Of a stretch of DNA of 64,000 bases, positions 8,619-64,000 are shown piece by piece (position 1 is the stretch's first letter; each line of letters starts with the position of its first letter). The notes under the pieces are model-generated. The model did no database searches, was not told where the DNA came from, and was given only the letters and a program-made list of their open reading frames with translations. The stretch comes from Dendrobates tinctorius (lineage: Eukaryota), in NCBI RefSeq assembly GCF_039654945.1, contig NW_027361870.1, positions 17,050,001 through 17,114,000 of the forward strand, given 5' to 3'. The translations under genes were made by a program, and so were the position numbers.

Positions 8619-8889
8619 NNNNNNNNNNNNNNNNNNNNNNNNNNNNNNNNNNNNNNNNNNNNNNNNNNNNNNNNNNNNNNNNNNNNNNNNNNNNNNNNNN
8701 NNNNNNNNNNNNNNNNNNNNNNNNNNNNNNNNNNNNNNNNNNNNNNNNNNNNNNNNNNNNNNNNNNNNNNNNNNNNNNNNNNNNNNNNNNNNNNNNNNNN
8801 NNNNNNNNNNNNNNNNNNNNNNNNNNNNNNNNNNNNNNNNNNNNNNNNNNNNNNNNNNNNNNNNNNNNNNNNNNNNNNNNNNNNNNNNN
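8619..8889. other. Assembly gap (N run)
   Basis: N characters. Confidence 1.
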
Positions 8890-18998: not shown

Positions 18999-19144
18999 NN
19001 NNNNNNNNNNNNNNNNNNNNNNNNNNNNNNNNNNNNNNNNNNNNNNNNNNNNNNNNNNNNNNNNNNNNNNNNNNNNNNNNNNNNNNNNNNNNNNNNNNNN
19101 NNNNNNNNNNNNNNNNNNNNNNNNNNNNNNNNNNNNNNNNNNNN
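18999..19144. other. Assembly gap (N run)
   Basis: N characters. Confidence 1.
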
Positions 19145-53500: not shown

Positions 53501-55522
53501 CAATAAGATGGCAGGTGACATAGTGACACTGCTTCAGTAAGATGACAGGTGACATAGTAACGCTGCTTCAATAAGACGACAGGTGACATAGTGACGCTGC
53601 TTCAGTAAGATGACAGGTGACATAGTAACGCTGCTTCAATAAGACGACAGGCGACATAGTGACGCTGCTTCAATAAGACGACAGGTGACATAGTGACGCT
53701 GCTTCAATAAGATGGCAGGCGACATAGTGACGCTGCTTCAGTAAGATGACAGGCGACATAGTGACGCTGCTTCAGTAAGACGACAGGCGACATAGTGACG
53801 CTGCTTCAATAAGACGACAGGTGACATAGTGACGCTGCTTCAGTAAGATGACAGGCGACATAGTGACGCTGCTTCAATAAGACGACAGGTGACATAGTGA
53901 CGCTGCTTCAATAAGACGACAGGTGACATAGTGACGCTGCTTCAATAAGACGACAGGTGACATAGTGACGCTGCTTCAGTAAGATGACAGGTGACATAGT
54001 GACGCTGCTTCAGTAAGATGACAGGCGACATAGTAACGCTGCTTCAGTAAGACGACAGGCGACATAGTGACGCTGCTTCAGTAAGATGACAGGTGACATA
54101 GTGACGCTGCTTCAATAAGACGACAGGTGACATAGTGACGCTGCTTCAGTAAGACGACAGGTGACATAGTAACGCTGCTTCAATAAGACGACAGGTGACA
54201 TAGTAACGCTGCTTCAATAAGACGACAGGCGACATAGTGACGCTGCTTCAATAAGACGACAGGTGACATAGTGACGCTGCTTCAGTAAGACGACAGGTGA
54301 CATAGTAACGCTGCTTCAATAAAACGACAGGTGACATAGTGACGCTGCTTCAGTAAGACGACAGGTGACATAGTAACGCTGCTTCAATAAGACGACAGGC
54401 GACATAGTGACGCTGCTTCAATAAGATGGCAGGCGACATAGTGACACTGCTTCAGTAAGATGACAGGCGACATAGTGACGCTGCTTCAGTAAGACGACAG
54501 GCGACATAGTGACGCTGCTTCAATAAGACGACAGGTGACATACGCTGCTTCAATAAGACGACAGGTGACATAGTGACGCTGCTTCAGTAAGACGACAGGT
54601 GACATAGTGACGCTGCTTCAATAAGACGACAGGTGACATAGTGACGCTGCTTCAATAAGATGGCAGGCGACATAGTGACACTGCTTCAGTAAGATGACAG
54701 GCGACATAGTGACGCTGCTTCAGTAAGACGACAGGCGACATAGTGACGCTGCTTCAATAAGACGACAGGTGACATACGCTGCTTCAATAAGACGACAGGT
54801 GACATAGTGACGCTGCTTCAATAAGACGACAGGTGACATAGTGACGCTGCTTCAATAAGACGACAGGTGACATAGTGACGCTGCTTCAGTAAGATGACAG
54901 GTGACATAGTGACGCTGCTTCAGTAAGATGACAGGCGACATAGTAACGCTGCTTCAGTAAGACGACAGGCGACATAGTGACGCTGCTTCAGTAAGATGAC
55001 AGGTGACATAGTGACGCTGCTTCAATAAGACGACAGGTGACATAGTGACGCTGCTTCAGTAAGACGACAGGTGACATAGTAACGCTGCTTCAATAAGACG
55101 ACAGGTGACATAGTAACGCTGCTTCAATAAGATGACAGGCGACATAGTGACGCTGCTTCAATAAGACGACAGGCGACATAGTGACGCTGCTTCAGTAAGA
55201 CGACAGGTGACATAGTGACGCTGCTTCAATAAGACGACAGGTGACATAGTGACGCTGCTTCAATAAGACGACAGGTGACATAGTGACGCTGCTTCAATAA
55301 GACGACAGGTGACATAGTGACGCTGCTTCAGTAAGATGACAGGTGACATAGTGACGCTGCTTCAGTAAGATGACAGGCGACATAGTAACGCTGCTTCAGT
55401 AAGACGACAGGCGACATAGTGACGCTGCTTCAATAAGACGACAGGTGACATAGTGACGCTGCTTCAGTAAGACGACAGGTGACATAGTAACGCTGCTTCA
55501 ATAAGACGACAGGTGACATAGT
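47519..55522. repeat. 8-kb satellite, 34-bp unit GACATAGTGACGCTGCTTCA(G/A)TAAGA(T/C)GACAGG(C/T), about 235 copies
   Basis: Direct tandem array with a 3118-bp internal duplication. Confidence 0.99.
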
Positions 55523-55789
55523 TTATGTTGCTACCCCCCCCCCCCCCCCACACACACACACACAAATCGTGACCATAGCACCAGGGTTTGTCTGCACCAG
55601 ACATTACACAGATACACCACAGGTCTGACACTGACTCCATTTACACAAGACAAATATACTTTTGTATTTTTACTACAGTTGGCTTGGAAATCTGGTATTG
55701 GCTTTGACTGATCATCTACCAATCTGAAAAAAATAATACCAAGATTTCCAGACATTTGTACAAAATCTAAATAATTTATTGAATCAGGA

Positions 55790-56071
55790 GTGAAAGGAGA
55801 GGCAGAGATTTCCAGATTACACAGCGTTTGCCGCCTCCATGTTTTTGTAGCCCGTTTCCTTCTCGTCGTTTTCCCCTCTAATAAAGTAGCGGTTACAATA
55901 TCAACCAATGGGCGCTCACGTATCATGGAATGTTACAAAACACAAGTAAGAGTCGCGCTGCTATTGGTGGAAGGTTGGCAGCGGGATTACAGGCGCAGAA
56001 GGTGACCTGAGCGCGGTGTTTCCGGTTCTGGACCTCCTGCGCCGCAGCCGGTTGTTGTGTGTACGGTACAG
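55790..56071 (+). promoter_or_regulatory. mkks: Promoter and non-coding exon 1 of the mkks transcript
   Basis: CpG-rich; CCAAT at 55905-55909, ATTGG at 55963-55967, ETS-like TTCCGG near 56020; strong donor CAG|GTGAGG after 56071. Confidence 0.65.
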
Positions 56072-56880
56072 GTGAGGCTGAGGAGCGGGGAGAGGTGACG
56101 TAACGTGTTACACTCAATGGGAACCTGTAGCCGAGCACTAATAATGGGGGTGTCGGTGTCACTGGTGTGGAAAGTAGTAGCCTAGAACTCACTGCAAATG
56201 TAGCACTGCAGCTGCGCAAGCGTCAGGGGTGACAATGAAGCCCAACAGCTGGGAACACAACCAAGGTAGAAGAGGGATTACACCTAAACGTGCAGGTGTG
56301 CAGGTCTGGTTGCTACGGGCAACAGCTCTGTTTTTGGCAGGAGTCTTGATTAGGGGCCCCAGAGAAGTCTGGATTCTGTTACCGAACCCAAACTGGATTC
56401 GAAGATGTGGTCCTGGTACCAGAACTGTTCCCAAACTTCAGCCAGAACCTGAACCCCCTTGAAAATATCGGGGACCCGAACTTCTCAGCCGGAACATTCT
56501 CTCGCTGTCTCTACACCGCACTTCCCCCAGAACGTCGAACATTGCAGCGGAGCTCCGGGAGAAGTCCGCGTTCTGCGTTTAGCATCAGACGGACACTGTC
56601 CGGTACGAACCCCAAACTTTTAAGTTTGGGTTCGCTCATCTCTAGTTACGTAGGTTGAGAAGACACCGGCCCAACGTTTCTCCACCAGTTCTAATCCAGC
56701 GTATGACCCACTATGCCATTGAGGCTGCCAAGAGGAAAGGGTCCAGTTCTTTTTTTTTTTTTTCTTAAATGTTTATCATGTATCTGTGGTTCTGACCTGT
56801 TACTGTAAAGATCCCTTTCCTATAGAGATGCTGGAATCGCCTTTCCTCCACACGTAACAAATGTGCGCTAATAATTTTAA

Positions 56881-58752
56881 CCCCTTACTGCCATTGGGCA
56901 CAATAGTACGTCCGATGGCAGCATCCCCGCTTTGATGACGGCTCCGGTGGTGAGCCTGCATCACAGCCGGGACATGTCAGCTGTTTTGAACAGCTGACAT
57001 GTGTCCACAATAGGCGCAGGTGGAATCGCGATCCACCGCTCCTATTAACTAGTTTAATGCCGCTGTCAAACACTCAGCCGGAAATACATGCATCACTGAC
57101 CGCCGTCACGTGATCGGAGGTCAGCGGTGCATCGGCATAACAATCAGAGGTCTCCTGGAGACCTCTATGGTTGTTGATGCCGGATTGCTATGAGCGCCCA
57201 CCCTGTGGTCGGCACTCATAGCAACGCTGTAATCCTGCTACATGTAGGCCAGGGCTGTGGAGTCGGAGTCGGTGCTCATTTTGGTGGAGTCGGAGTTGGA
57301 GTCGGTATAAAATGGACCGACTCCGACTCCTAAAATATATAATAAATTGGGTACAGTAATTCAATGCAGGATGTGCTGAATATTTTTTTATAGGAGTTTG
57401 GGAAGTTATGAAATGTCCTATAAATGACTGTTCTATTCCTGATCTAAGGCTACATTCACACACAGCGTTTTTCCTGTGTTTTTTGAGGATACGTTTTTCA
57501 GCTGCAAAAGTTGATCATCTTTTTAAAAAACTGCATCACCTGAAAGGTTTTTGAGCTCATAGATAATGTTTTCAATAGCAAAAGCAGATTAGAAATTTGC
57601 TCTATCTATATATCCATTTATCCATATCTGTCTATCCATATCGTATCTGTACCAAAAAGAATGAAAACCGGGTAGTACACAATATATATTCTGTTCTATC
57701 TAAATATCTTGATTATTGGATCATAAAAATGATTAAATGTCTGAGGTTCACATTGTACTACAATAAATTTTTCACTTAAATATAAGCAATATGTGTGGGA
57801 GTCGGAGTCGTGGAGTCGGAGTCAGAGTTGGAGTCGGAGTCGGTGTAAGGGAAATTGAGGAGTCGGAGTCGCAGGTTTGGCTTACCGACTCCACAGCCCT
57901 GATGTAGGCGATCTGCTCATCACCTATATGAGGCGATCGAGTTGTGGCCTCCCATGGAGACTATTGAAGCATGACAAAAGTAAAACAAAAAATGCTGTTA
58001 AAAGTATGAAAAAAATAAGTTTAAATCACCCCCCTTTTGCTCCATTCAAAATTGATAAAAATGAAATCAAACATTGACATATTTGGAATTACCGCGTTCA
58101 GAATCGCTCAATCTATCAGCAAAAAAAAAAAGGATTAACCCGATTGCTAAAAGGCGTAGCGGGGAAAAAAAAATCAAAACACCTGAAATACATTTCTTTG
58201 GTCGCCGCAACATTGCATTAGAATACAATAACGGGCGATCAAAAGATCATATCTGCACAAAAATGGTATCCTTAAAAACGTCATCTCAGCACACAAAAAA
58301 TAAGCCCTCACCCAACCCAAGATCATGAAAAATGGAGACACTACGGGTCTCGGAAAATAGCGCAAGTTTGTTTTTTTGTTTTTGTTGTTTTTTTTTAGCA
58401 AAGTTTGGAATTTTTTTTTCACCACAAAAAGGAACCTAGACATGTTTGGTGTCTATGAACTCGTAATGACCTGGAAAATCATAATGTCAGGTCAGTTTTA
58501 GCATTTAGTGAACCTATCAAAAAAGCCAAACAAAAAAAAACTGTGGGATTGCAATTTCACCACACTTGGAATTTTTTTCCCGTTTTCTGTTACACGACAT
58601 GGTAAAACCAATGGTGTCGTTCAAAAGTACAACTCGTCCCGCAAAAAATAAGCCCTCACATGGCCATATTGATGTAAAAATAAAAAACTTATGGCTCTGG
58701 GAAGAAGGGGAGTGAAAAACGAAAACAGAAAAAAGCTTCTGTCATTAAGGGG
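56881..58752. mobile_element. Non-autonomous piggyBac-like element in mkks intron 1
   Basis: TTAA|CCCCTTACTGCCA ... TGTCATTAAGGGG|TTAA. Confidence 0.8.
57250..57901. mobile_element. hAT MITE with a perfect 8-bp TSD
   Basis: ATGTAGGC|CAGGGCTGTGGAGTCGG ... CCGACTCCACAGCCCTG|ATGTAGGC; GGAGTC subterminal repeats. Confidence 0.92.
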
Positions 58753-58844
58753 TTAATAATAATTTGTAATTTTATAGTGCCAACATATTCCCCAGCACTT
58801 TACAATTCAGAGAGGACAATGGAGACATTACAGAATAACATATA

Positions 58845-59538
58845 CAGGTGCTTCTCACAAAATTAGAATATCATCAAAAAGTTAATTTATTTTAGTTCTT
58901 CAAAACAAAAAGTGAAACTCATATATTATATAGAGTCATTACACACAGAGTGATCTATTTCAAGTATTTCTGTTAATGTTGATGATTATGGCTTACAGCC
59001 AATGAAAACCCAAAAGTCATTAACTCAGTAAATTAGAATACTTTATAACACCAGCTTGAAAAATTATTTTAAAATCAGAAATGTTGGCCTACTGAAATGT
59101 ATGTTCAGCAAATGCACTCAATACTTGGTCGGGGCTCCTTTTACATCAATTACTGCATCAATGCGGCGCGGCATGAAGGTGATCAGCCTGTGGCACTGCT
59201 GAGGTGTTATGGAAGCCCAGGTTGCTTTGATAGCAGCCTTCAGCTCGTCTGCATTGTTGGGTCTGGTGTCTCTCATCTTCCTCTTGACAATACCCCATAG
59301 ATTCTCTATGGGGTTAAGGTCAGGCGAGTTTGCTGGCCAATCAAGCACAGTGATGCTGTTTGTAAACCAGGTACTGGTACTTTTGGCAGTGTGGACAGGT
59401 GCCAAGTCCTGCTGGAGAATGAAATTTCCATCTCCAAAAAGCTTGTCGGCAGAGGGAAGCATGAAGTGCTCTAAAATTTCCTGGTAGACGGCTGCACTGA
59501 CTTTGGTCTTGATAAAACACAGTGGACCTACACCAGCA
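58845..59538 (-). mobile_element. Truncated Tc1-like element (3' half of the transposase plus one TIR)
   Basis: TA|CAGGTGCTTCTCACAAAATTAG; encodes FILQQDLAPVH...WPANSPDLNPIENLW...GAPTKY*. Confidence 0.88.
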
Positions 59539-59738
59539 GCGCCAGAGCAAAGGGTCTGAATACTTATGACCATGTGATATTTCAGAAGAAATGTGTAGAA
59601 CAAGACAGGGAGGGGGGGAGCAGGTGAATAATCCCCGCCCAGCTGACCAGACAGCGGCAGTTTACATACATCTGAACCGATATAAAAAAGGTATTTATGC
59701 ATGAAAGGTGCGGGGTCAAGGGGAAGCAAAAGTACTAA

Positions 59739-60147
59739 GGCTGGTTTCACATTAGCGTTAAAACAACGCTGCGCACTGCGTCGGTGATCACCGCCTACTA
59801 TCGCATTTGCACGCATGCGATCGGCGCACCCTATCTTTAGCATAGGGTGCGCAGATCATGCGCTGCCAGTGTGAAAGTAGCGTGCTGCGCACTTTTGACG
59901 GTGCGCCGTGCGCGCCAAAATGCAACATGCTGCATTTCCGCGCACCGTCAAAAGTGCGCAGCACGCTACTTTCACACTGGCAGCGCATGATCTGCGCACC
60001 CTATGCTAAAGATAGGGTGCGCCGATCGCATGCGTGCAAATGCGAAAGTAGGCGGTGATCTCGGATGGGGCGGGCAGGGAGCCGGATCGGGGCGGGGCTT
60101 ACCGACGCAGTGCGCAGCGTTGTTTCAACGCTAATGTGAAACCAGCC
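59739..60147. mobile_element. Young PIF/Harbinger MITE, near-perfect fold-back
   Basis: TAA|GGCTGGTTTCACATTAGCG ... CGCTAATGTGAAACCAGCC|TAA; the inner arms 59786-59905 and 59941-60060 are almost exactly complementary. Confidence 0.9.
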
Positions 60148-61158
60148 TAAGAGAATCCTTATGTGACACACAATTGAATGATATCATTATATGATATCTC
60201 AAAAAAGGGGGGACAGATTCCCTTTAAAAGACCTTTTTAAATGGGATTTTCCAGCAGCATTTAAAAAAAAAAAATAAAGCAAACATAACTTTTTTCACCA
60301 TCACCGGGTCCGGCTCTGATTATTTGTTGCTGTTCCTAGTCTCTTATTGAGCCACTGATTGGCTGCAGCTCTGTCAGCGTGATGTCAGCTGTGCAGACAA
60401 TAACAGACACCAGAATTAGTGGCAGAGATGTTGTGCTGGACCTGGGAAGGGGGGAGTAGTGATGGGTTTATTTTTTTTATAAACAAATTGCAGCCAGGGG
60501 ACAGAGGTTTTTTCAAAATGGTAAACCCATTTAAGGAAAGTAGACTCTAAAAGCATTCATGTATTTAAAATAACAAACAGAGCAGGTACCTTCCTGACAC
60601 TTTTTTGGTCTCAATGTTTTGGCTGCAGTGGTCCATCATGTTGACAGGTCACATAACCGCTACAGCCAATCATTGAGCTTAGCAGCTGGCACAAGTAATA
60701 GCAGGTGGAGATGCGAAAAACTGTTGGGAAGAGAAAACTGCATTGTGTGCGGAATAGAAGCTGTACTGATAAGAGCAATGAGTACAGCCACATCCTGGAT
60801 GCACGCATACCTAGCGTTCAGCCTATAATAACAGGGAGGGTCAATCCCAGAAGAGAAAGTTCTGAAACTTGGATCAGGCAGCAAACAGCATTTCAGGGGT
60901 TTTGAAAGTGAATAATGGAATGAAGATTGCTGGCTGAAACTTTGCGCAACATATAACTAACATATATCAAAAACATGTTTTTCATCTCAGAGGTTTCCAT
61001 AACCTTTTAGAGGACTAAATTTGACTTATCTGTGGGCATTCTTGGTCCCGCTCGTACTCAGACATGCGTCTTTCTCCAGGCCCTGCTGTGTTATTTCCGA
61101 TTTGTAGCATTATTTTCCTTTCATTTATTTTTTGTTTTTGTGTAGATTGATCCAAGTG

Positions 61159-61344
61159 ATGGGACTAAAATCAATATGGAAGAGCTACAAAGTTTTGATT
61201 GTTATGGGGACAAGTCTTGGAGTAATACACTGGGGCTGGATTAACATGCAGTCAAACCCAATATTTCATCCTGAGGGTCAAGGTCGATTACCATCCATTT
61301 TTCGGTTTCTTTCAAGTGAAGAAACGGATCCAAAAGACAAATAA
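61159..61344 (+). CDS. 61-aa single-TM microprotein, homolog of the MKKS upstream ORF protein uMKKS1 (exon 61146-61366)
   Basis: MGLKSIWKSYKVLIVMGTSLGVIHWGWINMQSNPIFHPEGQGRLPSIFRFLSSEETDPKDK; acceptor TTTTTGTGTAG|, Kozak GTGATGG, donor TGG|GTAGGT. Aligns with recalled human uMKKS1 (..LWRDYKVLVVMVPLVGLIHLGWYRIKSSPVF..). Confidence 0.85.
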   Translation: MGLKSIWKSYKVLIVMGTSLGVIHWGWINMQSNPIFHPEGQGRLPSIFRFLSSEETDPKDK

Positions 61345-61421
61345 TGGTGTGATTGTGGTCCTTTGGGTAGGTGTCTATTCTATCCATCTGTATTTCCAGC
61401 TTTTACATACCATGCTCCAAA

Positions 61422-61484
61422 AATAAACATCAGGACATTCGTTTGCACATATTCTATGTTTAAAATTAAGAAATCTGTAATAAA
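61422..61484 (+). terminator. Two AATAAA polyadenylation signals just inside the intron after the uMKKS1 exon
   Basis: AATAAA at 61422-61427 and 61479-61484. Confidence 0.45.
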
Positions 61485-63376
61485 GCTGCATGTGCATGGC
61501 CATATTATAGCCCATTATGGACAGACTTGGAAAAAGGCACTCCTAGAGATATTTACTGAACCTGTACATACATATTAAGTTTTTTATCCTGTCAATTTAA
61601 ATATGTACAAATCGTGACATCAGCCTTATATAAGATACTATTCTCATATTTAAGCATTAGAGAGAATAGCTCCAAACATGGTGAAACCTCCTCCATACAA
61701 CTCTTATCTGGTGCATGAGGCATCAAGTCGTTCTGCTCAATTGTAAAAAAATGTTTATTATGATTTGTTTATTGAAATCCAATTGACAAATTATCTGGCT
61801 CCCAGGTCAGCTTACAAGTTGTTACCTCACTTTCACCCACTCTTTAAATGGGTTCTCCAGGAATGTAATATAACTGTCCCAGCCCCGTAACTCAGACGGC
61901 AACCCGTCCTAATCACGTGTGTCAGTCGGCAACCCGTCCTAGTCACGTGTGTCAGGACGGGCTGCAATCTGAAGAAACATTGCTCCCGAGACCTGTGTCT
62001 CAACTGACAGAGGAGCTGTATTGTAAATGCATGTTTTTCCTTGAGACCAGGAGAAGAGAAAAATCTCTACTCTGCTCACTGTGCACGTAGGACTGAGGCT
62101 CGAGAAAAAGAACTTTTGTGATCAGTTAGCTGAGGAGAAGAATTATTTTTTCTCCTGTCACAACCCTTCTCCAGTAGGTGAGCTTACAATAGAGCTCCTC
62201 TGTCACCTGAGGCACAAGTCTCAAGAGCTGTTTTTCTTCATACTACAGCATGTTCTGACATGTTACTAGGATGGGCTGCCCCCTGTTGTTGTTGATGTGC
62301 GCACTGCATCATGTAGTCTACAAGGTTACTGAGACCAGGGATTGGCTGCAGTGTTCACATGCTATAGTCATAACCTCTCGGCTGCAGCCATGACAGCGAG
62401 CCGGGCTTGAGTACCACAGCGTAATTAAGGCTGATTTTATTTTACACACAATAAAATCCTTAAAGCTGGAAGCCTCCTTTAAGACTTTTCAGAGGATTTC
62501 TCCTAACTGGATATATTACTTATTAGGGCTTCTGGACATCATAGGGCCCCCCAGCAAAGGCACATGCCTGCCAAACGGAGACCAAAAGGACGGTTGGCTT
62601 CCTTCTAGTGGATGGGAATACTGGGAAAGCTCCTGGTGTGTCCTAGACAAAGTGCACTTGCCTTTTAAGGTGCAGTCAGACGTCAATATGAATCAGACCG
62701 CAATGCCTGGACTGGCCGACACTCTTTCCGACCCGAGCATTACGGCTTCGTAGGAATATATGCAGCTGTCACGCTTGGGTCGGGAGAGCCACCGGTCAGT
62801 CTGTGCACTGCTTCCCGATTTTGATCCGATTTATACGTCCACCTGACTGCGCCCTTACTCTGCGTTTCCTATGTAGTGGCTATAATGTGCAGCTGCCTAC
62901 ATCATTCCCTCGTCATACCAGCAGATGGCTAGGGGTTTTAGCAGCAATTCTGCAGGGTGCCTCATAGTACAGAAGGGGGTTGTCCAGGTCTCAGCCTTGT
63001 AATTGTTATTCATTTAAGTTCTAGATCTCAGTAGGTACTGACATACAATATTTTTCCTTCAAGGGATCTTCCCATCTATAAAATGTATGCATATCGTTGA
63101 ATATTCCATCACTTTGATTCTTATGGATACGACCTCTGGGGCTTGCACTGATCCTCTGTGATAATTTATTACCTCAGCCCCTTTACAGTTTTCTGTGCAG
63201 AGCGGCACCTTCTATTCTAGTGAGTAGTCTGGTGTGCTGCTCTACAGAAAATCAGAGTGAAATTTCCATAGTGAAAGTCAGCATTGCAGCTTTTTATATT
63301 TTTAGAATTGTTGGGGTCCCAGAGATCAGATCTCCAGAATGGTTAATTCTAATGATCATTTTACAAATTCCTTTAA

Positions 63377-63788
63377 AGCACCACTCCAGCGTTTTTCCAC
63401 ACTGGAGTGGCGCTTTACATGTAAGCACCCTTCCCCCATTCTTATACTCATCCTCTGGTGGCTTCACCTTTTACCGATGCTGCTCCTGTCCTGCGACATC
63501 ATCTTGTGAGCTCAGCTTCTAACTGGCTGGAAGTCAGAAGCTACGTCACAGGAGCTCAATGCAAGTCTATGAGAGGGAGAATGGGGCCAGAACCAGGCGG
63601 TCATAGACTTGTATTGAAAAGTGGCCTCCGGCGTGCTCCATGAAGCACTGGAGCAGGCGGCAAGTCAATTTTTTTTGCGGGGGAGCAAAGCTGGAAAAGG
63701 AAGAAGGCAGCAGAATATATGAGGCAGGGAACTTACATTTAAAGTGCCACTCCACGATGCAATAAAAAAAAAACTCTTGAGTGGTGCT
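63377..63788. mobile_element. TTAA-target MITE (T2/Kolobok-like)
   Basis: TTAA|AGCACCACTC ... GAGTGGTGCT|TTAA. Confidence 0.75.
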
Positions 63789-63906
63789 TTAAGCAAAATT
63801 CACAATAGTTTCCATATTTCAGAATGAAATTGAATGTAATTGCCATTTTTTCTTTTCCCCCAGACTTTTTAAACTATCCTCTCCTTGACCTGGAAGCCGA
63901 GGTGCC

Positions 63907-64000
63907 ATGAAGCCAAAATCATTTTTGCGGAGGAATTGGTTCTGGGTCGCTGGGATATCCTTTCTAGGCATTCACTTTGGGACATATTTTATTCAAAGAG
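63907..64000 (+). CDS. N-terminal 31 aa of a second microprotein, homolog of uMKKS2 (exon starts 63864 and runs off the window)
   Basis: Acceptor TTTTCCCCCAG|; GCCATG start; MKPKSFLRRNWFWVAGISFLGIHFGTYFIQR. Aligns with recalled human uMKKS2 (MKNTSWIRKNWLLVAGISFIGVHLGTYFLQR). Too short for the ORF track. Confidence 0.87.
   Translation, partial: MKPKSFLRRNWFWVAGISFLGIHFGTYFIQR

What the first reader, a model, noticed from the sequence alone, without database searches (positions are those of the whole stretch)
56010..64000. Polycistronic vertebrate mRNA: two microprotein ORFs in the 5' leader of mkks
Seen: exons ending at 56071, spanning 61146-61366 and starting at 63864 splice with canonical sites. 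The first AUG (strong Kozak context) opens a 61-aa ORF; a second microprotein ORF starts 65 nt after its stop on the spliced RNA. Known: the human MKKS/BBS6 mRNA carries uORFs for the mitochondrial microproteins uMKKS1 and uMKKS2. Inference: this frog keeps both ORFs, in the same order and on separate exons, which suggests a conserved operon-like transcript of two membrane microproteins plus a chaperonin. Standard annotation would call this UTR.
Basis: partly seen in the sequence, partly recalled or inferred. Interest (0 to 1): 0.85.

Follow-up and report, generated by a model that had tools for sequence, protein, structure and literature searches.

The report
Frog mkks leader encodes two microproteins
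The start of this frog's mkks gene carries two small, strongly conserved membrane-peptide genes ahead of the chaperonin; they are real, but they are the frog copies of the already described human uMKKS1 and uMKKS2.

Summary
Exon 1 ends at 56071, exon 2 is 61146-61366 and exon 3 starts at 63864, all with canonical splice sites. A 61-aa ORF lies at 61159-61344. A second ORF starts at 63907, 65 nt later on the spliced RNA.

Flanking DNA from the same contig shows that ORF2 is 50 aa and stops 59 nt past the window end. The MKKS chaperonin ATG follows 192 nt later in the same exon.

RNA-derived contigs from four studies carry the exon 2-exon 3 joint. The exon 1-exon 2 joint was not tested with reads. 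It is supported only by promoter and donor-site conservation in two other frogs.

Both peptides belong to families found across jawed vertebrates. RefSeq names the orthologues 'LOC128706665/LOC128706666 homolog', and LOC128706665 is UniProt's 'alternative protein MKKS'. Among frogs, dN/dS is 0.06-0.49, similar to MKKS itself.

This is therefore a known system, already annotated in other frogs, and not new.

Two side results go beyond the finding. An AATAAA signal 47-86 nt before the MKKS ATG is conserved in every linked locus. Three teleosts keep the ORF pair with no MKKS nearby.

The scan also holds another note on this same stretch (s1-376933, a paralogy idea). I tested that idea and it was not significant.

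The parts
55899..56039 (+). Conserved promoter block with a CCAAT box and an inverted CCAAT box; the 5' end of exon 1 lies somewhere within it
   Evidence: blastn matches upstream of the ORF1 exon in Rhinoderma (L007) and Engystomops (L008). Alignment A3 shows invariant CAACCAAT, CTATTGGTGGA and GAAGGTGACCTG blocks. CpG observed/expected is 0.8-1.0.
56010..56071 (+). Non-coding exon 1; the start is approximate, the donor follows 56071
   Evidence: GTGAGG donor. The donor aligns with GTAAG donors in two other frogs. No ATG in this stretch. The joint to exon 2 was not tested with reads.
56072..61145 (+). Intron 1, carrying a Tc1/mariner-type transposase remnant at 59118-59843 on the minus strand
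   Evidence: 241-aa ORF with a DDE_3 match, E=4e-13. Very high repeat-type contig depth at 58200-59600.
61146..61366 (+). Exon 2
   Evidence: AG acceptor and GTAGGT donor. RNA-derived contigs cover it and join 61366 to 63864 in 4 of 4 runs. The X8 contig starts at 61148.
61159..61344 (+). ORF1, 61 aa plus stop: frog orthologue of uMKKS1 / LOC128706665 / 'PNAS-117'
   Evidence: Translation. 72-80% identical to RefSeq-annotated frog proteins. The profile finds 120 vertebrate proteins, including elephant shark at 1e-18. dN/dS is 0.12-0.49 among frogs. Hydrophobic core at residues 12-30.
61367..63863 (+). Intron 2 (2497 nt)
   Evidence: Skipped with GT..AG ends in contigs of runs X1, X2, X3 and X8.
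63864..64000 (+). First 137 nt of exon 3. The exon continues past the window through the ORF2 stop, an AATAAA signal and the MKKS ATG.
   Evidence: Acceptor. L001 is the same contig and is identical over the 12,842-nt overlap. It is open from the acceptor through the MKKS ATG at L001 13094 (window-equivalent 64252) and a 338-codon Cpn60_TCP1 exon.
63907..64000 (+). ORF2, first 31 of 50 codons: frog orthologue of uMKKS2 / LOC128706666. The stop lies at window-equivalent 64057-64059.
   Evidence: Translation. 62-90% identical to annotated 48-53-aa frog proteins. A profile search finds 29 representative clusters. dN/dS is 0.06-0.24. Hydrophobic core at residues 11-29.

Best explanation
This is the 5' end of the frog mkks (BBS6) gene, organised like the human gene. 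A TATA-less, CCAAT-box promoter drives a transcript with a short non-coding exon 1. Exon 2 carries a 61-aa ORF (uMKKS1 orthologue). Exon 3 carries a 50-aa ORF (uMKKS2 orthologue), then a poly(A) signal, then the MKKS chaperonin start codon.

Both small ORFs encode real proteins under selection. Each has one hydrophobic helix with a conserved Gly/His motif. By orthology they would sit in the mitochondrial membrane.

Inferred mechanism:
- Scanning ribosomes meet the ORF1 AUG first, in a strong context, and translate it.
- Some ribosomes reinitiate 65 nt later at ORF2.
- Five further AUGs lie in the 192-nt spacer, so few ribosomes reach the MKKS AUG.
- Use of the internal AATAAA signal would give a short bicistronic mRNA lacking MKKS.

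The leader would then both produce two microproteins and hold MKKS output low.

Shown here: the ORFs, their conservation and selection, the exon 2-exon 3 splice, and colinearity with MKKS.

Inferred from human work: translation, mitochondrial location, repression of MKKS, and use of the internal poly(A) site.
For: Anatomy at the stated coordinates. ORF2 is 50 aa, and the MKKS ATG lies in the same exon, followed by a 338-codon Cpn60_TCP1 exon.

The exon 2-exon 3 joint is present in contigs of 4 of 4 runs. One contig (X3) runs 1686 nt beyond the window end.

A fully spliced RNA-type contig from another vertebrate (L006) carries ORF1, ORF2, AATAAA and a 595-aa MKKS ORF in one piece.

The same order, ORF1 -> ORF2 -> MKKS, is found in five frogs and a turtle.

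Family membership rests. LOC128706665 is 'alternative protein MKKS', encoded in the MKKS 5' UTR.

Among frogs, dN/dS is 0.12-0.49 for ORF1 and 0.06-0.24 for ORF2, against 0.11-0.23 for MKKS exon 1. The excess of synonymous change gives Fisher p from 1e-4 to 1e-10 in five of six comparisons with the window frog.

A purine at -3 of both start codons is kept in all ten loci.

AATAAA lies 47-86 nt before the MKKS ATG in all seven linked loci, with a shuffle expectation of 2-14% each.

Human precedent covers uORF repression, a short uORF-only transcript made by alternative polyadenylation in the 5' UTR, and peptides in mitochondrial membrane fractions.
Against: There is no ribosome-profiling, proteomic or localisation evidence for any frog.

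The exon 1-exon 2 joint and the transcription start were not seen in reads. In three runs of a related organism label, contigs read through the exon 2 acceptor into intron 1 (60309-61146). An alternative start or a retained intron therefore exists there.

The laid runs are only guessed to be RNA. Contigs cannot prove a single molecule spanning ORF1 to the MKKS CDS in this species, and I could not see the letters of the X3 contig beyond 64000.

Hydropathy of both helices is moderate (Kyte-Doolittle 19-residue maximum 1.3-1.4).

Neobatrachian frogs, this one included, have lost the C-terminal IPEPGIVxYV motif that ORF1 keeps from shark to archaeobatrachian frogs.
Confidence: 0.9

Rival explanations
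1. The two ORFs form an autonomous bicistronic microprotein gene that ends at its own poly(A) site. MKKS only shares the promoter by read-through, or has its own start, so 'uORF of mkks' is a misnomer and regulation of MKKS is incidental.
For: Eel, Collichthys and Phoxinus keep ORF1 and ORF2 on two exons with a poly(A) signal 54-121 nt after the ORF2 stop. They have no MKKS-like coding sequence on either strand within 10 kb. In eel and Phoxinus the next gene is a convergent steroid-dehydrogenase gene. The AATAAA before the MKKS ATG is conserved in all linked loci. A published interactome prediction calls the human protein a mitochondrial protein unrelated to MKKS, linked to complex IV.
Against: In tetrapods the MKKS ATG sits only 47-86 nt after that signal in the same exon. 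The spliced contig L006 carries all three ORFs, and the X3 contig runs 1.7 kb past the window end. Human reporter work shows the uORFs repress the main ORF. This is more a change of emphasis than a contradiction of the main explanation.
Confidence: 0.35
2. The ORFs are purely regulatory upstream ORFs. Only the act of translating them matters, and the peptides have no function of their own.
For: uORF-dependent repression of MKKS was shown in human cells. Many uAUGs crowd the spacer.
Against: Amino-acid conservation runs from shark to birds, with invariant residues. dN/dS is as low as for MKKS. The ORFs persist in teleost loci where there is no MKKS to regulate. The human peptides were detected by western blot and mass spectrometry.
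Confidence: 0.04
3. These are chance ORFs in an untranslated leader, or a mis-called exon structure.
For: Short ORFs are common in leaders. The exon 1 joint was not seen directly.
Against: Homologues score E-values down to 1e-35. The splice joint is present in four runs. Synteny holds in ten loci.
Confidence: 0.01

Closest known systems
Human MKKS/BBS6 5' leader with uMKKS1 (63 aa) and uMKKS2 (50 aa); Akimoto et al. 2013, BBA 1830:2728, as summarised in PMC11837024 and PMC12573267
   Same: Two small ORFs lie in the same order ahead of the MKKS chaperonin CDS. The peptide sizes are alike (61 and 50 aa here). A poly(A) signal sits in the leader between ORF2 and the MKKS ATG. RefSeq names the frog-family proteins as homologues of the human loci.
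   Different: Nothing has been shown experimentally in frogs. No counterpart of the human uMKKS0 was looked for. The ORF1 C-terminal tail of neobatrachian frogs differs from the otherwise conserved IPEPGIVxYV-type tail.
Other bicistronic vertebrate mRNAs whose uORF encodes a mitochondrial microprotein (MIEF1 microprotein, SLC35A4 uORF peptide)
   Same: A conserved-peptide uORF encodes a small mitochondrial protein upstream of an unrelated main ORF. A dual role, regulator plus product, has been proposed.
   Different: Here there are two consecutive microprotein ORFs on separate exons, plus an internal poly(A) site. There is no sequence relationship to those peptides.
Small single-pass OXPHOS assembly or accessory microproteins (UQCC5/SMIM4, UQCC6/BRAWNIN, SMIM20/MITRAC7, COX6C-like, NDUFA3)
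   Same: They are similar in size and have one hydrophobic helix. They are the nearest named clusters by language-model features for ORF1. The human orthologue is predicted to bind complex IV components or assembly factors.
   Different: All feature scores are 0.81-0.84, below the tool's 0.9 lead threshold. There is no Pfam match and no solved homologue. This is a functional analogy only, not membership.

Membership tests
uMKKS1 / 'alternative protein MKKS' / LOC128706665 / PNAS-117 family | Significant sequence homology to named family members | tested here: met
   72-80% identity to RefSeq 'LOC128706665 homolog' proteins of frogs. A profile search finds 120 vertebrate proteins, including ones named PNAS-117. 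The link from LOC128706665 to the MKKS 5' UTR protein comes.
uMKKS1 / 'alternative protein MKKS' / LOC128706665 / PNAS-117 family | Encoded upstream of the MKKS CDS on the same strand, in the leader | tested here: met
   ORF1 lies at 61159-61344. The MKKS ATG is at window-equivalent 64252. The same layout holds in six other linked loci.
uMKKS1 / 'alternative protein MKKS' / LOC128706665 / PNAS-117 family | Direct alignment with the human protein | not tested
   No human sequence was fetched. Only a published human tryptic peptide was seen. Its '..DDIPEQ..' resembles the '..DYIPEP..' of turtle and fish tails, which is weak support.
uMKKS1 / 'alternative protein MKKS' / LOC128706665 / PNAS-117 family | Translated in vivo and found in the mitochondrial membrane fraction | not testable with these tools
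   Shown only for human cells.
uMKKS2 / LOC128706666 family | Significant sequence homology to named family members and the same length class | tested here: met
   The ORF is 50 aa. It is 62-90% identical to annotated 48-53-aa frog proteins, including 'LOC128706666 homolog'. 29 representative clusters match at E<=1e-3.
uMKKS2 / LOC128706666 family | Lies between ORF1 and the MKKS ATG, in the exon that holds the MKKS start | tested here: met
   The order is kept in all ten loci examined.
Polycistronic MKKS transcript with uORF repression and alternative polyadenylation in the leader | ORF1 and ORF2 on one spliced RNA | tested here: met
   The joint 61366->63864 is present in contigs that cover both ORFs, in 4 of 4 runs.
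Polycistronic MKKS transcript with uORF repression and alternative polyadenylation in the leader | MKKS CDS on the same RNA as the two ORFs | tested here: inconclusive
   In this frog the X3 contig runs 1686 nt past the window end, but its letters were not shown. The feature is met in another vertebrate by contig L006.
Polycistronic MKKS transcript with uORF repression and alternative polyadenylation in the leader | Poly(A) signal inside the leader, and its use | tested here: inconclusive
   A conserved AATAAA is present 66 nt before the MKKS ATG. No 3'-end data were available, and the stretch lies outside the window.
Polycistronic MKKS transcript with uORF repression and alternative polyadenylation in the leader | The uORFs repress MKKS translation | not testable with these tools
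   Human reporter data only.

The most novel reading that the evidence does not exclude
The ORF1-ORF2 pair may be an old, self-contained bicistronic gene for two co-inherited mitochondrial microproteins, with its own conserved poly(A) site. In tetrapods MKKS would be expressed only by reading through that site. Teleosts have physically separated the pair from mkks, giving a natural uncoupling experiment. ORF1 may even predate vertebrates: an arthropod 58-aa cluster scores 0.94 by language-model features (untested).
Probability: 0.4. Interest if true: 0.5.

Novelty: already known. Interest (0 to 1): 0.28.

Why it matters
For this window it matters mainly as annotation. Exons 2 and 3 of mkks are coding, not UTR, and the two peptides should be carried as genes, as RefSeq already does in other frogs.

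More broadly, the comparison shows the two microproteins are selected as proteins as strongly as MKKS itself. They travel as a pair even where MKKS is gone from the locus. This argues that they have a function of their own, probably in the mitochondrial inner membrane or complex IV, that is still unknown.

Frogs and fish would be practical systems to knock them out without touching MKKS.

Tried and rejected
- **Paralogy of the two peptides** (idea from scan note s1-376933). Profile-profile comparison aligns the helices with His and Gly in register, but the probability is only 4% and the score 15. Column-shuffled controls reach that score in 8 of 300 trials (whole alignment) and 29 of 300 (core only). 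Paralogy is not shown.
- **Pfam.** No family for either peptide. The best match was Tom7 at E=0.13, far below cut-off.
- **Solved structures.** No homologue for either profile.
- **Rfam on 55000-64000.** Nothing found.
- **Frameshift origin of the odd neobatrachian ORF1 tail.** I considered this from hand translation of the other frames. I rejected it because the last residues (D-x-K-x-K) stay in frame with the ancestral tail. A two-residue deletion plus divergence fits better.
- **Short query.** It was solved by fetching the flank.
- **Primary literature.** The Akimoto 2013 paper is not held in the library, and the ESUCA supplement is not held. The published taxonomic range of conservation could therefore not be read.
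- **Species of contig L006.** It could not be identified. Its MKKS is closest to the turtle's (58%).
- **Extra teleost-type contigs.** L011 and L012 turned out to be genomic, and they said nothing about MKKS linkage.
Full report
**Observation.** I read the three stretches directly.
- The exon ending at 56071 is followed by GTGAGG.
- The exon 61146-61366 is preceded by a long pyrimidine tract and AG, and followed by GTAGGT.
- The exon starting at 63864 is preceded by a pyrimidine tract and AG.
- There is no ATG in 56010-56071.
- The first ATG, at 61159, lies in GTGATGG. It opens 61 codons ending at TAA 61342-61344.
- The next ORF starts at 63907, which is 22 + 43 = 65 nt after that stop on the spliced RNA. 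It runs off the window after 31 codons.

**Extension beyond the window.** The 61-aa protein is on record for contig JAYMGB010000102.1 of assembly GCA_039654945.1. The fetched locus L001 is identical to the window over the 12,842-nt overlap (window coordinate = L001 coordinate + 51158).
- ORF2 is 50 aa, at L001 12749-12901. Its stop lies 59 nt past the window end.
- 192 nt later, in the same uninterrupted exon, an ATG in the context ATAATGG opens a 338-codon exon that matches Cpn60_TCP1 at E=2e-46.
- The gene table lists a 572-aa Cpn60_TCP1 product from there.
- The spacer holds five more ATGs and one AATAAA 66 nt before the MKKS ATG.

**Transcript evidence.** One call of read laying was available, limited to 6,000 letters. 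I laid 58001-64000 to cover the joint that matters for polycistrony. I chose four runs from four studies: three labelled organism A, about 97% identical to the window, and one labelled organism B, essentially identical.
- All four carry a contig that joins 61366 to 63864, skipping 2497 nt with GT..AG ends.
- In X8 the 538-nt contig (depth 55) starts at 61148, two bases from the predicted acceptor, while intron contigs have depth about 3.
- In X3 the contig continues 1686 nt past the window end. If colinear, it would reach well into the MKKS CDS, but its letters were not shown.
- In the organism-A runs the contigs read through the acceptor into intron 1 (back to 60309-60862). An unspliced or alternatively started form therefore exists there.
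- The runs are only guessed to be RNA, although a precisely excised intron argues for RNA.

The exon 1-exon 2 joint was not covered. As a substitute, the stretch 55899-56039 is conserved upstream of the ORF1 exon in Rhinoderma and Engystomops. The conserved features are a CCAAT box, an inverted CCAAT box and a GAAGGTGACCTG block, and the donor after 56071 aligns with GTAAG donors in both species.

**Identity of the peptides.** ORF1 finds 61-62-aa proteins of other frogs at 72-80% identity, named by RefSeq 'uncharacterized LOC128706665 homolog', and an eel protein.
- A profile of these finds 120 proteins from frogs, salamanders, turtles, lizards, alligator, birds, many teleosts and the elephant shark (E=1e-18). 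Several are named 'PNAS-117'.
- ORF2 finds 48-53-aa frog proteins at 62-90% identity, one of them named 'LOC128706666 homolog'.
- An exhaustive profile search for ORF2 gives 29 representative clusters with the same motif.
- A preprint states that LOC128706665 is UniProt's 'alternative protein MKKS', encoded in the MKKS 5' UTR. It predicts a link to complex IV components or assembly factors.
- Reviews give human uMKKS1 as 63 aa and uMKKS2 as 50 aa, both found in mitochondrial membrane fractions. They describe repression of MKKS by the uORFs and a short uORF-only transcript made through a poly(A) site in the 5' UTR.
- uMKKS1 was also confirmed by mass spectrometry, and a sequence-dependent effect of the MKKS uORF was reported.

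I did not fetch human sequence, so the link to the human proteins rests on these names and papers.

**Synteny.** The order ORF1 -> ORF2 -> MKKS is found in the following loci:
- the window frog;
- Pseudophryne, Rhinoderma and Engystomops;
- Xenopus tropicalis, where ORF2 is present but not called;
- the turtle Emydura.

A 3,624-nt spliced contig from a public run (L006, species unknown, MKKS closest to turtle) carries all the parts in one piece:

| Feature in L006 | Position |
|---|---|
| ORF1 | 64-258 |
| ORF2 | 331-483 |
| AATAAA | 628 |
| MKKS ORF (595 aa, uninterrupted) | 697-2484 |

**Selection.** Nei-Gojobori estimates among five frogs are as follows:

| Region | dN/dS range |
|---|---|
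| ORF1 | 0.12-0.49 |
| ORF2 | 0.06-0.24 |
| First MKKS exon | 0.11-0.23 |

The excess of synonymous over non-synonymous change is significant in five of six comparisons with the window frog (p from 3e-4 to 9e-11). Both start codons keep a purine at -3 in all ten loci. Each peptide has one moderately hydrophobic 19-residue core: residues 12-30 in ORF1 and 11-29 in ORF2. Invariant Gly and His lie inside these cores.

**What it is.** This is the frog orthologue of the known tricistronic MKKS leader. The likely working is as follows.
- Ribosomes initiate at the strong ORF1 AUG.
- Some reinitiate at ORF2.
- Few reach the MKKS AUG past five further AUGs.
- Use of the internal poly(A) signal would give a short mRNA for the two microproteins only.

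The anatomy, splice, homology and selection are shown here. Translation, localisation, repression and poly(A) use are inferred from human work.

**Side results.**
1. AATAAA lies 47-86 nt before the MKKS ATG in all seven linked loci and aligns as a block in the five frogs. The shuffle expectation is 2-14% per locus. The alternative poly(A) site known from human is therefore probably conserved.
2. In eel, Collichthys and Phoxinus, both ORFs are present on two exons with a poly(A) signal 54-121 nt after ORF2. No MKKS-like coding sequence exists on either strand within 10 kb. In eel and Phoxinus the next gene is a convergent Steroid_dh gene. The pair thus survives without MKKS, which argues for a function of its own. 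I had no shark or gar locus, so I could not tell whether linkage is ancestral.
3. Neobatrachian frogs, this one included, have replaced the IPEPGIVxYV-type tail of ORF1 that is kept from shark to archaeobatrachian frogs.
4. The idea that the two peptides are paralogues was tested and is not significant.
5. Language-model features place ORF1 next to an arthropod 58-aa cluster (0.94). They place it more weakly (0.81-0.84) among small OXPHOS accessory proteins. These are leads only.

**Verdict.** The finding is real and correctly interpreted, but it is already known. The human system was published in 2013. RefSeq annotates both peptides in several frogs and other vertebrates. The gene table of this very contig already lists them. 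Interest is low to moderate, and the teleost uncoupling and the conserved internal poly(A) signal are the parts worth a further look.

The N runs at 8619-8889 and 18999-19144 were left untouched.

Noticed in passing
L002 10001-10829 (eel), L005 10001-12554 (Collichthys), L010 10001-11238 (Phoxinus): Teleost loci keep both microprotein ORFs on two exons with a poly(A) signal after ORF2. They have no MKKS-like coding sequence within 10 kb on either strand. In eel and Phoxinus the next gene is a convergent Steroid_dh gene.
   Followed up: partly
L001 13028-13033 (window-equivalent 64186-64191, just outside the window): An AATAAA lies 66 nt before the MKKS ATG. It is conserved at 47-86 nt in all seven loci where MKKS follows the ORFs and aligns as a block in five frogs. 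It probably corresponds to the alternative poly(A) site described for the human 5' UTR. Its use is untested.
   Followed up: partly
window 61255-61341 (C-terminal half of ORF1): Neobatrachian frogs (this one, Leptodactylus, Pseudophryne, Rhinoderma, Engystomops, Eleutherodactylus, Pyxicephalus) have a 61-aa ORF1. Its tail lacks the IPEPGIVxYV-type motif kept in shark, teleosts, turtle, birds, salamanders and archaeobatrachian frogs.
   Followed up: partly
window 59118-59843 (-), with contig pile-up at 58200-59600: A Tc1/mariner-type transposase remnant (DDE_3, E=4e-13) lies in intron 1. Contigs of all four runs pile up there at depths in the thousands, as expected of a high-copy expressed repeat.
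   Followed up: partly
window 60309-61146: In three runs of a related organism label, the contig that carries the exon 2-exon 3 splice also reads continuously through the exon 2 acceptor into intron 1. This suggests a retained intron or an alternative start upstream of exon 2 in that organism.
   Followed up: no
window 61192-61251 and 63934-63993: The two peptides share a V-x-G-x-S...I-H-x-G pattern in register inside their hydrophobic cores. Profile comparison with shuffled controls gives p of about 0.03-0.10, so common origin is neither shown nor excluded.
   Followed up: yes
ORF1 protein (P0001): The language-model feature search puts an arthropod cluster of 58-aa hypothetical proteins at score 0.94 (205 of 256 features shared), right after the protein's own vertebrate clusters. 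This hints that the family may be older than vertebrates. No sequences were available to test it.
   Followed up: no
L004 1-3427 (-), Xenopus tropicalis: In Xenopus tropicalis a UPF0492-domain gene runs divergently upstream of the ORF1 exon. By my own recollection, not checked here, UPF0492 is the SLX4IP family. If so, this fits the scan's note of a divergent slx4ip-mkks promoter pair in this window.
   Followed up: no
window 8619-8889 and 18999-19144: Two runs of N (271 and 146 bases).
   Followed up: no
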